A stretch of DNA of 64,000 nucleotides from Marsupella aquatica (taxonomy: Eukaryota > Plantae > Marchantiophyta), in contig OZ316897.1 in the NCBI GenBank assembly GCA_973895155.1, positions 4,372,211 through 4,436,210 of the forward strand, read 5' to 3'. Shown here one piece after another: positions 33,183 to 64,000 of this stretch; within the stretch, counting starts at the first letter, position 1; every line of letters starts with the position of its first letter. The notes under the pieces are model-generated. The model was given only the letters and a program-made list of their open reading frames with translations. It was not told the DNA's origin and did not search any database. The position numbers and the translations under genes are program-made.

Positions 33183-36100
33183 ATGGCTGGTTGGGTTGAT
33201 CGCGTCGGGATGGGTAAGCGATTATATCCATACACGAGAATCTTTGAGGTTGCTGTACTGATCTTCATGGCAACTTGCGCGAGCGTGCCGTCGTTAAATG
33301 CACAACCAGGTTTGTGTTTCTTATACACAATCATTATTACGAGTTACAAATGGCAAACTTGTAGCAGTGCCTTCTTTACAATAGTTTTGAATGGAACTGG
33401 CACCAATTTCAATTGCTCTGTAGACTCACCTAGTGTAAGGTTGGCCTCCGTTTTAAGATCCAAGAGTTACTCTCGTACTGACCTCGGAATCTGGCGGAGG
33501 TCAGTACGTGTTCTGCATGTGTAGCACAAGACGAATCTTTCTTAAATATTTGGTATATATGGAGCAATTCATCATTAGTTCACTCCGAATGGCCTCATTG
33601 GTATAATTGTCGGTACAGTGCTTTGTGCACTCGTAGCTTATGATCGAGAGTGTTTGTAATATCAATTACTGCTGCAGAAGCAAATAAAATCACTACCGTA
33701 AACATCACCTACAGGTGCTCGCGCGCTTGCAGTATGCAGGAGTTGACGCAGGGAATAAAATAGCATAAAACCGTGAAATCGAAATCGAAGTGCTATTTTC
33801 AAATCTAATTGTCTACTCAATCGAATTAATGTGCAATATATGTAGGATTCCTGACCCTCGATTGCGGTGCTCGGACTGGTTACAACGATACTCACCATCT
33901 GCAATGGGAAACCGACGACGGCTATATTGATACAGGATCCAGTTCTCAACAGTCATTTTATCCAGGTGACCAGCGGGCCCTGGGAAGTTTTAGATACTTT
34001 CCAGGAGACCGAAGTAAATATTGCTACGCCCTAGATACTCTAGATTGGACTTACTTGGTTCGTGCCAGTTTCTACCTGGATGAGGCCGAGTTTACGCACA
34101 GACAACCCTTCGAGTTTATTTTGTCGATAGACGCTACGGACTGGTTCACGGTAACAAGTGGCGACGTGACGTCCCAATCTTCTCTGCTCGTAGTACAAGA
34201 GGCCATCTTCCATCCTCCAAACATCAATACCAAATTTTGCCTACGGCCAGTCTCTGGTGTGCCGTTCATTTCCTCCTTGGAGCTGCGACCGCTGGATAAC
34301 GTCTATACTCCAACGGACGCGTACTCTTACCCAGGACGATTTAGCCAGTTTCTTGCCCTCGGTGTCAGATATAATACTGGAGCTAAGAATGTCCCCGATG
34401 TGAGGTAAGGTATCAAATTGACCTCTTGTAAGCATACCCAGTGTAGAGGCCCATGGGGTTCCGCCCTCAGAAATTGTGGCTAGCTACGTTCAATTTTAGA
34501 GAAAACATGCTTGCTGATTTGATTTCAACGTACGTACTGATTACCCAGATTGTATGCTCTAGTCAGACAAGCTCCAACATAAGACATCCGGAACAAAGAG
34601 TGACTCGCTACGAGTGACGAATGCTGTTCCTAAAGTTGGACTTGGATGACAGAGCTTTGAAATTATTAGATGATCATTGCTGTGTGATTTATGACAACTT
34701 CTAATCAGGTACCCCGATGATCCATACGATCGAATTTGGACGACCCCTTATGCACCCGTAGCCAACCTCACAAGCATCGGAAGTATGCAGCCAACAGAAA
34801 ACACAACCATAGCCCAATATTACGTACCGCCGAAAGTGATGCAAGATGCATGGTTGTTTGTAGATTTCGCTACGATCACTTTGGAGGTTTACACAGATGG
34901 ACCACAGGTGTACTCGACTCCGAGTGAATACGCGTTTGTGGTTGTGTATTCTCAAATTCTAAATACATCAGAGCCAGGACCAGATGAAATAGTCATCTAT
35001 TTCGATTACGACCTCGACCTGGTTTTCTTGGATTCCTCTACTAAACCTAACATGACATCGATTCCTTTTGTGACCCTTTCGACGAATACCATCAATATTA
35101 CGCTACAAAATGAGACACCCAATCGTGCTGCAAGCATGAACGCGGTTGAGGTTTATTCCCAGCGTAGCTATAATTCGTCCAGAACAAATGACGATGACGG
35201 TACGATTGCGCTTCCCTTACCACCTTTGAGTGCAAACAGAAGGGTCAAATTTAATTTTCGTCCTGATGCTTGATTCAGAAGTTTTGAAACTCATTTTCGG
35301 TTTGACAAGCCAGATGCTTAGTATACTTTTGTTTGATGTTCAGCCGCAGTTATCGAAGCTCTGAAGACAATGTTCTCACTGACCGACTGGCGAGGAGATC
35401 CTTGCGTTCCGGTGCCTTATAACTGGCTGTCTTGCGATTTGTGGGACCCGACCTTCGGAAAAAGTCAACAGTGCACTAACTGCGGGCAGCAAGGCTCTCA
35501 ACGCTCGATATTTGCGACGTTTTTTAATGTGACGTCTTTGTAAGCCACACAACTTCATACTCTCACTCATAAAAAGCATTCGCATGAAGGGTAGCGTTTT
35601 TGTTTAATGTGTAACGGTGAACTTGTTCGGGAAAATTAAATACCTACTCAACTGTACGTGAGCTTTACTCTGTCAGTCTTGAATTCTATAGTACCCAATC
35701 CCAGATCGAATGTCCGCCAGCGTCGAATTGCACATCAGTTTGGTGGAACGACTGTGCTGTAGTTAACCTTAACTTGTTTTGTCGACCGATAGAAGTACAA
35801 TTATTGACTTCACGGTGGAGGACATAGCACGAGAAATCAATTCGTCATACATAGAAAGAAGCATCACGAGTCCAAAGATTTGTGTAGCTATACGTCATAT
35901 TAAAGTACTGTATATTTGCTTAGTTACGCTTCGATCCAGCTTCCATTACAGGCTACATCCAAACAGTTTGTACTGCCTGATTTCAGACTACTACCACGCG
36001 ATTCAGTAGACTGCTATCAATGTTACGACGAGTCCCGGATGAGTCATTGGAGGTGCTCTCCAGATTGATGGGGTCCTTTTGATACACTGTTGCTACTAGA

Positions 36101-62369: not shown

Positions 62370-64000
62370 ATGGCTCGTTTGGTTGATGGCGTCGGGATCG
62401 GCAAGCAATTATGCACATACAAGAGCGTTCTTGAAGTTGCTGTTCTGATCTTCATGGCAACTTGCGCGAGTGTGCCGACGTTGGTTGCACAACCTGGTTT
62501 GTCTATCTCATGCACAATCATTTTTATGAGTTGCAGATGTCAAACTTGTACCATCTTCTTTACGATAGTTTACAATCGAATTGGCACCATTATTATTCGC
62601 ACCATTGACTCAGTTAGCGTAAGGGTGACCTCCATTCGAGATCGAAAATAATTACTCTTGTACTGACCTCATATTCTGGCACGCGCGCAGTCACTAGGAT
62701 TTCTGCATGTGTAGCACAAGACGAATCATTTATACTATCGTTATTGCGGACCAATTGTAGAGGCTTCAATAGTATTACTTGGAATCAGGCCTGATTGGCA
62801 TGATTGTCGGTACATTGCTTTGCGCTCTCGTAGCTTATGATCGGAGCGTTAGTACCATCAAATACTGAGGCAAGAGCAAATTAAACCGCTACTGTAACCA
62901 ACAGCGAGAGGTGCTCGCCGTCGCTTGCAGCATGAGTATGTAGAAGTTGATGCAGGGAATAAACTAACATACATAAAACCGTGAAATCGTGATCGAAATG
63001 CTATTTTAAAATCTTTTGTGTACTCAATCGAATTGAATGTGCAGATTTAGGATTTCTGAGCCTCGACTGCGGTGCTCAGACCAAGTACACCGATAACCAC
63101 ACACTGCAATGGGAAACCGACGAGGGCTACATTAATACAGGGAACAGCGTTCAACTGCCTTCTTATCCAGGTGACCAGAGGGCCCTGGGAAGTTTTAGAT
63201 ATTTTCCAGGAATGCGAAGTAAATATTGCTACGACCTACCTACTGTATCTTTGAGTTACTTGGTGCGTGCCAGTTTCTACATGGATGAGTCCGAGTTTAC
63301 ACACAGACAACCCTTCGAGTTTATTCTGTCTATAGACGCTACCGACTGGTTTACGGTCACAAGTGGTGCTGATACATCCCAATCTTATCTGCTGGTAGTT
63401 CAAGAGGCCATCTTCAATCCTCCATACATGAATACCAGTTTTTGCCTACGGCCAGTGCCCGGGCGAGGTATGGCTTTTATTTCCTCATTGGAGCTGCGAA
63501 GCCTAGACTCAAACCCGGGCTTGTACTCTTACCGAGCACATTATAGCCAGATTCTAGCCCTCGGAGCAAGGTATAATGCTGGAGCTGCTCCGAGTGTTCT
63601 TGATTTGAGGTAAGTATCAAATCATACGCAGTGTAGACTGAGGCAAGTTGTTTCCAGCACTCAGAAATTGTGGCTAAGACAAAACATGCTTGCTGACTTG
63701 AATTCAGCGTTACAGTATGCCCTAGTCTAGCAAGACACACGTGCTTATGTATGAGACAATACTCTAGTGCGTTCTTTCATAGCTCATCCCCCAAAGTTAA
63801 CAAATGGTCTTCCTAAAGTTGCAATTAGGTGATAGACCTTTGAACTCGATCTTACATGATCATTTGCTTGTGATTCATCGAAATACATGATCAGGTACCC
63901 CGACGATCCATACGATCGAATTTGGACGACCCCTGACGAATCCTTCGCCAACCTCACAAGCATCTCATGTGCGAATCCAAAAGACAACGAACCCGTAACA
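62370..64000 (+). CDS. Malectin-like/LRR receptor-like kinase, paralog 3, 5' part only (exons 62370-62496, 63045-63609, 63895 to beyond the window end)
   Basis: MARLVDGVG...[61 protein letters not shown]. Intron positions match paralogs 1 and 2. Confidence 0.88.

What the first reader, a model, noticed from the sequence alone, without database searches (positions are those of the whole stretch)
33183..64000. Tandem array of apparently chimeric receptor kinases: SYMRK/LRR-I-type malectin-like+GDPC front end, extended LRR stack, LRR-VIII-2/DUF26-like kinase
Seen: three head-to-tail paralogs about 14.5 kb apart. The two complete ones have an N-terminal malectin-like domain, WxGDPC, about 8-9 LRRs ending in an LxGNPYC cap, a TM and an RD kinase. 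The kinase begins [25 protein letters not shown]|G and has introns at YK|G, LW|G, GTL|GY and DW|V. Established: LRR-I and SYMRK receptors pair malectin-like+GDPC with only about 3 LRRs, and in Lotus SYMRK the GDPC motif is needed for ectodomain release. LRR-VIII-2 kinases normally carry LRRs first and malectin second. Inference: exon shuffling made a lineage-specific receptor class that then expanded in tandem, a candidate microbe- or cell-wall-glycan-sensing cluster with a cleavable ectodomain. This is the best candidate for an undescribed system in the window.
Basis: partly seen in the sequence, partly recalled or inferred. Interest (0 to 1): 0.8.

Follow-up and report, generated by a model that had tools for sequence, protein, structure and literature searches.

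The report
Tandem chimeric malectin-LRR receptor kinases
A liverwort genome carries three side-by-side copies of an intact cell-surface receptor kinase that joins the sugar-binding-like front end of the symbiosis receptor SYMRK to the body of an unrelated leucine-rich-repeat receptor kinase. This mosaic is real, but it is an old class shared by other liverworts and peat mosses, not a new invention of this lineage.

Summary
Three head-to-tail paralogs start at 33183, 47903 and 62370. Copies 1 and 2 are intact 17-exon GT-AG genes of 1166 and 1179 aa; copy 3 runs off the window. Each has a signal peptide, malectin-like domain, WxGDPC, about 9 LRRs, an LxGNPYC cap, a TM segment and an RD kinase, with introns at YK|G, LW|G, GTL|GY and DW|V.

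The chimerism is supported. A 100/100 branch separates the kinase from LRR-I/SYMRK-type kinases. It sits in a bryophyte clade beside LRR-VIII-2, SD1 and DUF26, and its kinase introns match a CRK, not LRR-I. The head's introns match LRR-I. The LRR stack, cap, TM and kinase align collinearly with Sphagnum LRR-only kinases. So the LRR stack was probably inherited from that partner, not extended.

"Lineage-specific" is not supported. The same mosaic occurs in Marchantia (Mp1g21730, a predicted pseudokinase with fewer LRRs), in Calypogeia fissa (about 22 loci, all annotated truncated), in one full-length transcript, and in dozens of Sphagnum genes. Published surveys list bryophyte-only MLD-LRR-RLK clades; I found none that notes the kinase mismatch.

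Kinase dN/dS is 0.13 and ectodomain about 0.5, so the genes are functional. The ligand and GDPC cleavage are untested.

The parts
33183..42658 (+). Copy 1, a complete gene of 17 exons and 1166 aa. Exons: 33183-33309 (signal peptide); 33846-34404 and 34709-35199 (malectin-like domain); 35344-35539 (WRGDPC linker); 36424-36516, 36939-37016, 37194-37361, 37958-38116, 38668-38742 and 39310-39576 (LRR stack); 39971-40056 (LYGNPYC cap); 40269-40409 (TM and juxtamembrane); 40726-40844, 41114-41324, 41492-41729, 41910-42060 and 42317-42658 (RD kinase and tail).
   Evidence: Projected from the copy 2 model with conserved phases. The ORF is intact. TBLASTX shows collinearity. The tail after the kinase is frame-shifted relative to copy 2.
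47903..48029 (+). Copy 2 exon 1: start codon and signal peptide.
   Evidence: ATG followed by a hydrophobic stretch and a GT donor in phase 1.
48564..49885 (+). Copy 2 exons 2-3 (48564-49131 and 49383-49885): malectin-like domain.
   Evidence: Pfam PF12819 with E=5e-24 and 9.5e-8, covering profile positions 1-330. The intron at VR|YPDD is shared with LRR-I genes.
50045..50231 (+). Copy 2 exon 4: [10 protein letters not shown] linker and the start of the first LRR.
   Evidence: The intron before this exon is shared with the LRR-I genes P0026 and P0052.
51096..54028 (+). Copy 2 exons 5-10 (51096-51188, 51588-51665, 51915-52082, 52540-52698, 53234-53308 and 53795-54028): a stack of about 9 LRRs. 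All of these exons start and end in phase 2.
   Evidence: The exon content is supported by the intron-free transcript P0397. The stack is homologous to Sphagnum LRR-only kinases (P0355, E=1.6e-18).
54310..54395 (+). Copy 2 exon 11: C-terminal LRR cap (LHGNPYC...YLCR).
   Evidence: The same cap occurs in Marchantia, in Sphagnum MLD-bearing kinases and in Sphagnum LRR-only kinases.
54670..54810 (+). Copy 2 exon 12: transmembrane helix and juxtamembrane segment (WKLRKQ...IQQ).
55064..57296 (+). Copy 2 exons 13-17 (55064-55182, 55601-55811, 55965-56202, 56518-56668 and 56895-57296): RD protein kinase and C-terminal tail, ending at the stop codon.
   Evidence: Pfam PF07714 and PF00069. Catalytic motifs are intact. 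Introns lie at YK|G, LW|G, GTL|GY and DW|V. dN/dS against copy 1 is 0.13.
62370..64000 (+). Copy 3, partial: exon 1 at 62370-62496, exon 2 at 63045-63609, and the start of exon 3 from about 63896. It runs off the window.

Best explanation
The array holds three tandem duplicates of a functional single-pass receptor kinase. The gene belongs to an old bryophyte class of mosaic receptors.

Shown: each protein has a SYMRK/LRR-I-type head and an unrelated body. [quoted passage not shown] The body is that of a bryophyte LRR receptor kinase: about 9 LRRs, an LLxGNPxC...CR cap, a TM segment and an active-looking RD kinase. That kinase sits on the LRR-VIII-2/SD1/DUF26 (DLSV) side of the RLK tree, not with LRR-I.

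Inferred: the join most likely arose by recombination within phase-2 introns between LRR exons. It happened before the Marchantia and Calypogeia-type liverworts split. The window lineage then amplified the gene in tandem. The ectodomains diverged quickly while the kinase stayed under strong constraint.

Inferred mechanism: the ectodomain binds an unknown extracellular ligand (a carbohydrate, peptide or partner receptor) and the RD kinase signals across the plasma membrane. Cleavage at GDPC may shed the malectin-like head and leave an LRR receptor, as in Lotus SYMRK.
For: - Gene models: copies 1 and 2 are intact 17-exon GT-AG genes.
- Selection: dN/dS between copies 1 and 2 is 0.13 in the kinase, 0.53 in the MLD and 0.49 in the LRR stack, with dS 0.43.
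- Kinase tree (64 rows, IQ-TREE with a mixture model): LRR-I-type kinases are split off with 100/100 support on a branch of 0.95. The window genes, Mp1g21730, Mapa_003942 and a Calypogeia copy form a 100/97 clade. That clade sits inside a 100/100 bryophyte clade with Sphagnum kinases. The AU test rejects window family plus LRR-I as one group (p=0.014).
- Identity of the copy 2 kinase: 55-58% to Sphagnum, 42-46% to SD1/CRK/LRR-VIII-2 and 32-42% to LRR-I.
- Introns: the kinase introns VYK|G and GT|xGY are shared with Sphagnum P0280, Marchantia P0072 and the CRK P0285. The LRR-I genes P0026 and P0052 instead have NEV|, ARG| and PEY|. The head introns (SP|G, VR|YPDD, D| before the GDPC exon) are shared with LRR-I.
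- Body: copy 2 residues 459-1150 align in a single HSP (39% identity over 704 aa) with the Sphagnum LRR-only kinase P0355. The cap and juxtamembrane motifs are shared.
- Head: the best non-family match of the copy 2 head is the LRR-I-type P0026. Sphagnum MLDs rank 89th or lower.
- Expression of a relative: P0397 comes from an intron-free RNA-seq contig.
Against: - The order of the bryophyte clade, LRR-VIII-2 and SD1/DUF26 is unresolved (82/21).
- The tree holds only six RLK groups and no outgroup. "DLSV side" therefore rests on branch length, the intron pattern and the published view that these groups are allied.
- The AU p-values (0.014, 0.016) are moderate.
- There is no expression data for the window genes themselves.
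- The ligand, kinase activity and GDPC cleavage are all untested.
- The Marchantia orthologs have HGN in place of HRD, so catalysis is not universally needed in this class.
- Copy 2 may contain an additional cassette exon.
Confidence: 0.75

Rival explanations
1. These are ordinary LRR-I/SYMRK-family genes. Their kinase has simply diverged fast, so the placement outside LRR-I is a tree artefact and no domain shuffling happened.
For: The head (MLD, GDPC and its intron positions) is LRR-I-like. Kileeg et al. 2023 (PMC10739070) file bryophyte-only subclades, including MLD-less ones with long LRR domains, under LRR-I. The log-likelihood cost of forcing the window family next to LRR-I is only 17.7.
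Against: - A 100/100 split separates the kinases, and the AU test gives p=0.014.
- Two kinase introns are shared with a CRK and three LRR-I introns are absent. Rate variation cannot produce that.
- The kinase is under strong constraint (dN/dS 0.13).
- The body is collinear with LRR-only kinases that have their own LRRNT_2 domain.
Confidence: 0.07
2. This is a recent chimera specific to this lineage, made by exon shuffling in this liverwort and then amplified.
For: Tandem amplification is local. The closest database relatives are only about 57% identical.
Against: Marchantia Mp1g21730 and Mapa_003942 have the same mosaic and the same introns. So do about 22 Calypogeia fissa loci, a transcript from another sample and dozens of Sphagnum genes.
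Confidence: 0.03
3. The array is a decaying pseudogene cluster rather than a set of working receptors.
For: A Calypogeia relative (L001) has a stop codon in an LRR exon and has lost the exon part that holds the catalytic lysine. The copy 1 tail is frame-shifted. The Marchantia orthologs lack HRD. A neighbouring scan note reports decaying LRR exons just beyond the window.
Against: Copies 1 and 2 have intact ORFs across 17 exons with canonical splice sites and complete catalytic motifs. Kinase dN/dS is 0.13 at dS 0.43.
Confidence: 0.06

Closest known systems
SYMRK / LRR-I malectin-like LRR receptor kinases (MLD-LRR-RLKs such as SYMRK, IOS1 and FRK1)
   Same: Both have a signal peptide, a tandem-malectin (PF12819) domain, a WxGDPCxP linker and then LRRs, a TM segment and a kinase. 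The intron positions in the head are identical (SP|G, VR|YPDD, and D| before the GDPC exon). The MLD is closest to liverwort LRR-I-type MLDs.
   Different: The kinase is not in the LRR-I clade and has a different intron pattern. There are about 9 LRRs, against 2-4 (or "four or more") reported for the family. The LRR stack and cap are homologous to a different LRR-RLK lineage.
Bryophyte LRR-only receptor kinases of the same kinase clade (for example Sphagnum CY35_08G093800 = P0355 and BDL97_02G123200 = P0322)
   Same: The LRR stack, the LLGGNPxC...CR cap, the TM segment, the WK.R...IQ / QVQPxxYxY juxtamembrane segment and the kinase are collinear at 39-43% identity. They are the nearest neighbours on the kinase tree.
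   Different: They begin with LRRNT and further LRRs in place of the MLD-GDPC head.
Marchantia polymorpha Mp1g21730 (MPTK2_1g21730) and M. paleacea Mapa_003942, both annotated as hypothetical proteins
   Same: Same mosaic, same 12 intron positions, and kinase sister group at 100/97 support.
   Different: They have only 13 exons, so fewer LRRs. They have HGN for HRD and GYGAFG in the glycine loop, which predicts a pseudokinase. I saw them only as single loci, not as a tandem array.
LRR-VIII-2 (LRR-malectin RLKs such as RFK1 and At1g56140), DUF26/CRK and SD1 kinases (the DLSV group)
   Same: The kinase lies on the same side of the 100/100 split at 42-46% identity. The kinase introns are shared with a CRK.
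   Different: There is no DUF26 or B-lectin domain. LRR-VIII-2 places a single malectin (PF11721) after the LRRs, whereas here a tandem malectin-like domain comes first. The kinase is not nested in any of these angiosperm groups.

Membership tests
LRR-I / SYMRK family (MLD-LRR-RLK) | N-terminal malectin-like domain (PF12819) followed by the WxGDPCxP motif | tested here: met
   Pfam on exons by reference. Motif context. Intron positions shared with P0026 and P0052.
LRR-I / SYMRK family (MLD-LRR-RLK) | Kinase domain inside the LRR-I clade (subfamilies are defined by the kinase tree) | tested here: not met
   100/100 split from 21 LRR-I-type kinases, including one annotated RLK-Pelle-LRR-I-1. AU p=0.014. 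The LRR-I kinase introns are absent.
LRR-I / SYMRK family (MLD-LRR-RLK) | Short LRR array (about 2-4 repeats) | tested here: not met
   About 9 LRRs by sequence and about 8 strands in the model of P0397.
LRR-VIII-2 (LRR-malectin RLK) | LRRs first, then a single malectin domain (PF11721) | tested here: not met
   The domain order is MLD, then GDPC, then LRR. No PF11721 hit was found.
LRR-VIII-2 (LRR-malectin RLK) | Kinase nested in the LRR-VIII-2 clade | tested here: not met
   Six LRR-VIII-2-type kinases form their own 99/90 clade, which excludes the window family.
DLSV kinase group (DUF26, LRR-VIII, SD1) | Kinase groups with these families to the exclusion of other RLK subfamilies | tested here: inconclusive
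   It lies on their side of a 100/100 split from LRR-I and shares the VYK|G and GT|xGY introns with a CRK. No other RLK subfamily and no root were in the tree.
DUF26 / CRK | Stress-antifung (PF01657) ectodomain | tested here: not met
   No PF01657 hit on any exon or on the full-length relative.
Bryophyte mosaic class (MLD-GDPC head on an LRR-RLK body; Mp1g21730, Calypogeia, Sphagnum) | Same domain order, same cap and juxtamembrane motifs, same intron positions and a shared kinase clade | tested here: met
Active RD protein kinase | Glycine loop, VAIK lysine, alpha-C glutamate, HRD, DFG and APE all present | tested here: met
   GHGGFG, LAVKK, DEFLNE, HRDIKP, DFG and APE are present in copies 1 and 2. 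Activity was not assayed.

The most novel reading that the evidence does not exclude
One bryophyte LRR-receptor-kinase lineage captured the SYMRK-type malectin-like and GDPC head more than once, independently in liverworts and in peat mosses. Each time the head replaced the LRRNT end of the receptor. If so, the head behaves as a reusable, possibly cleavable, plug-in sensor or autoinhibitory module.

The evidence points this way but is not decisive. The head trees and body trees disagree. Window-family MLDs group with liverwort LRR-I MLDs at 95/84 support. The AU test rejects a single window-family-plus-Sphagnum MLD clade at p=0.016. LRR-only members are interleaved with MLD-bearing ones on the kinase tree.
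Probability: 0.3. Interest if true: 0.6.

Novelty: new variant of a known kind. Interest (0 to 1): 0.42.

Why it matters
Plant receptor kinases are classified by their kinase tree, and function is often transferred along that tree. This class has an ectodomain head from one subfamily (SYMRK/LRR-I) and a body from another. It would therefore be misfiled by head-based, whole-length or HMM-based surveys.

The class also offers a natural experiment on what the MLD-GDPC module does. The same LRR-kinase body exists with and without the head in Sphagnum, and with an active or a dead kinase in different liverworts.

In practical terms, all of the roughly 22 Calypogeia fissa family members are annotated as kinase-less fragments, so receptor-kinase counts for such long-intron genomes are too low.

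This does not reveal a new kind of signalling system.

Tried and rejected
- I could not hand a joined (spliced) window protein to Pfam, the large protein searches or AlphaFold, because a spliced model has no reference. Those tools received single exons by reference or database relatives (P0072, P0159, P0002, P0397). That joined step was left out. Spliced models existed only inside local scripts, built from coordinates, for alignments, local BLAST, trees and dN/dS.
- The first kinase search, with the Marchantia protein as query, was swamped by fused multi-kinase gene models, so single-kinase relatives were hidden. I repeated it with a shorter Sphagnum probe.
- Exon maps failed or could not be obtained for several references. 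Mapping failed for the LRR-VIII-2 gene P0299. The Sphagnum LRR-only genes P0319, P0322 and P0355 are not on record. LRR-exon boundaries could therefore not be compared with an LRR-only gene or with LRR-VIII-2.
- Searches for Mp1g21730 in papers and supplements found nothing. I could not establish whether the published bryophyte clades (LRR-I.1 to LRR-I.4, or clades V-X) include this class.
- I considered the idea that the long LRR stack arose by local exon duplication, because exons 7 and 8 resemble each other. I rejected it as the main cause, because the whole stack aligns with the Sphagnum LRR-only kinase P0355. Marchantia more likely lost exons.
- The species of the window was not identified. 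It is not Calypogeia fissa itself, since the best hit is only about 57% identical.
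Full report
**Observation.** Self-comparison of the window shows three collinear head-to-tail copies (TBLASTX). Copy 1 matches copy 2 at 67-81% nucleotide identity in the aligned blocks, and the intergenic DNA does not match. 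The start codons lie at 33183, 47903 and 62370.

From reading-frame segments, paralog conservation and splice signals I derived a 17-exon model for copy 2. Every intron is GT-AG and the ORF is uninterrupted at 1179 aa. Projecting it onto copy 1 with conserved phases gives 17 exons and an intact 1166-aa ORF. Copy 3 has exons 1-2 and the start of exon 3 before the window ends.

Pfam on single exons, given by reference, finds Malectin_like across the whole profile, LRR and protein kinase. The WxGDPC motif, nine LRRs, the LxGNPYC cap, a TM helix and all catalytic kinase motifs are present.

A spliced protein has no reference, so it was never given to Pfam, the large protein searches or the structure predictor. 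Those tools received exons by reference or database relatives. The spliced models were assembled from coordinates only inside local scripts, for alignments, local BLAST, trees and dN/dS.

**Are the genes alive?** Between copies 1 and 2, dS is 0.43. dN/dS is 0.13 in the kinase, 0.53 in the malectin-like domain and 0.49 in the LRR stack. The duplication is therefore old. The kinase is under strong purifying selection and the ectodomain evolves much faster, as is usual for tandem receptor arrays. The only defect seen is a frame change in the copy 1 tail, after the kinase.

**Relatives.**
- An HMMER scan of 1.8 billion representatives with the first MLD exon gave only 7 hits below 1e-30. All were short gene models.
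- These models come from Calypogeia fissa (GCA_965154635.1). Its annotation holds about 22 family members, all truncated to 427-693 aa.
- The DNA downstream of two of them carries the full LRR, cap, TM and kinase exon series. One of the two (L001) has a stop codon in an LRR exon and has lost the part of the exon that holds the catalytic lysine.
- A full-length 1147-aa member (P0397) comes from an intron-free RNA-seq contig. It is 54% identical to copy 2 and contains the equivalents of exons 4-12, apart from about half of exon 7. This supports the exon model.
- Marchantia polymorpha Mp1g21730 (P0072) and M. paleacea Mapa_003942 (P0151) have the same architecture. All 12 of their introns sit at positions used in the window genes. 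They have fewer LRR exons, and HGN replaces HRD.
- Using a Sphagnum kinase as probe, dozens of annotated Sphagnum proteins from eight species show PF12819, LRR and this kinase type. They also carry the GDPC motif and the same cap.
- The best database match to copies 1 and 2 is only about 57% identical, so the window species is a liverwort other than C. fissa.

**Kinase type.**
- In a 64-row maximum-likelihood tree, 21 LRR-I-type kinases form one side of a 100/100 branch of length 0.95. All of them come from MLD-GDPC-LRR proteins. They include a Lupinus protein annotated RLK-Pelle-LRR-I-1 and liverwort genes such as Mp1g05090.
- The other side holds LRR-VIII-2-type kinases (named after At1g56140, RFK1 and At1g07650), SD1 and DUF26 kinases, and a 100/100 bryophyte clade.
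- The bryophyte clade contains the window family (100/97), the Sphagnum MLD-LRR kinases and Sphagnum LRR-only kinases.
- The order of these three groups is unresolved (82/21).
- Forcing the window family together with LRR-I is rejected (AU p=0.014).
- Intron positions give independent evidence. The window genes, Marchantia, Sphagnum P0280 and a Nymphaea CRK share introns at VYK|G and GT|xGY. The LRR-I genes from Calypogeia and Lupinus lack these and have introns at NEV|, ARG| and PEY| instead.

**Where the join lies.**
- The head introns (SP|G, VR|YPDD, and D| before the GDPC exon) are shared with the LRR-I genes.
- The best non-family match of the copy 2 head (residues 1-458) is the Calypogeia LRR-I-type protein P0026. 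Sphagnum MLDs rank 89th or lower.
- In contrast, copy 2 residues 459-1150 (LRR stack, cap, TM and kinase) align in one HSP, at 39% identity over 704 aa, with the Sphagnum LRR-only kinase P0355.
- The LRR stack alone matches P0355 at E=1.6e-18, against 8.6e-6 for the best LRR-I protein.
- The LLxGNPxC...CR cap and the juxtamembrane motifs are common to the window family, to Sphagnum MLD-bearing kinases and to Sphagnum LRR-only kinases.
- The LRR-only proteins are genuine, and one has an LRRNT_2 domain.

So the mosaic is a head from an LRR-I-type gene on the body of a bryophyte LRR-RLK. The junction lies after the GDPC exon, among LRR exons that are all in phase 2. The long LRR stack was most likely inherited from the body, and Marchantia probably lost exons.

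An AlphaFold2 model of P0397 has mean pLDDT 74, with the LRR region mostly at 80-93. It shows about 8 regularly spaced LRR strands.

**One event or several?** In the MLD tree the window family groups with the liverwort LRR-I-type MLDs P0026 and P0042 (95/84), and the Sphagnum MLDs lie elsewhere. Holding the window-family and Sphagnum MLDs together is rejected at p=0.016. On the kinase tree, LRR-only and MLD-bearing Sphagnum genes are interleaved. This suggests more than one capture of the head. The support is moderate and no outgroup was available.

**Literature.**
- Kileeg et al. 2023 (PMC10739070) report bryophyte-only LRR-I subclades. One has no MLD and a longer LRR domain. They also describe the GDPC motif as family-wide.
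- A 2026 preprint (10.64898/2026.05.08.723708) lists lineage-specific MLD-LRR-RLK clades V-X, including a Marchantia clade.
- Yang et al. 2021 (PMC8287233) note a large moss cluster.
- None of the text I could read mentions a kinase of another subfamily on these receptors. Mp1g21730 is not found in any held text.

**Verdict.** The chimerism is supported and located more precisely. The claim of a lineage-specific new class is not supported, because the class is old and spread across liverworts and peat mosses. Function is inferred only from anatomy. That covers the ligand, glycan sensing and GDPC-dependent shedding.

Noticed in passing
window 50304-50396: Downstream of the copy 2 GDPC exon lies a duplicate of its 3' half (...[12 protein letters not shown]). 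It has AG/GT sites that would give frame-preserving exons of 54-93 nt. This is a possible extra cassette exon that is not in my 17-exon model. An earlier scan note (s1-784980) covers it.
   Followed up: partly
window 39310-39576 (copy 1 exon 10): Copy 1 carries a short in-frame tandem repeat (DNSSKPA, about 2.5 copies) in the loop or island of the penultimate LRR. Copy 2 lacks it.
   Followed up: no
window about 42610-42734: The copy 1 C-terminal tail is shifted into another frame relative to copy 2. The copy 2-like tail is still readable in a second frame.
   Followed up: partly
L001:10001-22090 (Calypogeia fissa CBCUJL010000054.1): This family member has a stop codon in LRR exon 9 and a kinase exon 14 that has lost the part encoding the catalytic lysine. 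It is probably a pseudogene. Only its first 519 aa are annotated.
   Followed up: partly
Calypogeia fissa annotation (P0001-P0008, P0396-P0410): All of the roughly 22 annotated family members are truncated models of 427-693 aa without a kinase, apparently because of long introns. At the two loci I checked, the kinase exons lie downstream without any gene call.
   Followed up: partly
L003:10001-14737 (Marchantia polymorpha Mp1g21730) and P0151: The Marchantia orthologs have HGN for HRD, GYGAFG in the glycine loop and an altered APE region. They are predicted pseudokinases in a compact 4.7-kb gene.
   Followed up: partly
P0153, P0175, P0159 (Sphagnum): These gene models fuse neighbouring kinase/MLD genes (two or three kinase domains per protein). 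This implies tandem arrays of the class in Sphagnum too.
   Followed up: no
window 23631-27149: Three copies of a repeat of about 330 bp at about 90% identity, two direct and one inverted. They may be ends of a transposable element.
   Followed up: no
window 59225-59452: A 75-aa lysine- and arginine-rich low-complexity ORF lies in the spacer between copies 2 and 3. The spacers between copies share no similarity.
   Followed up: no
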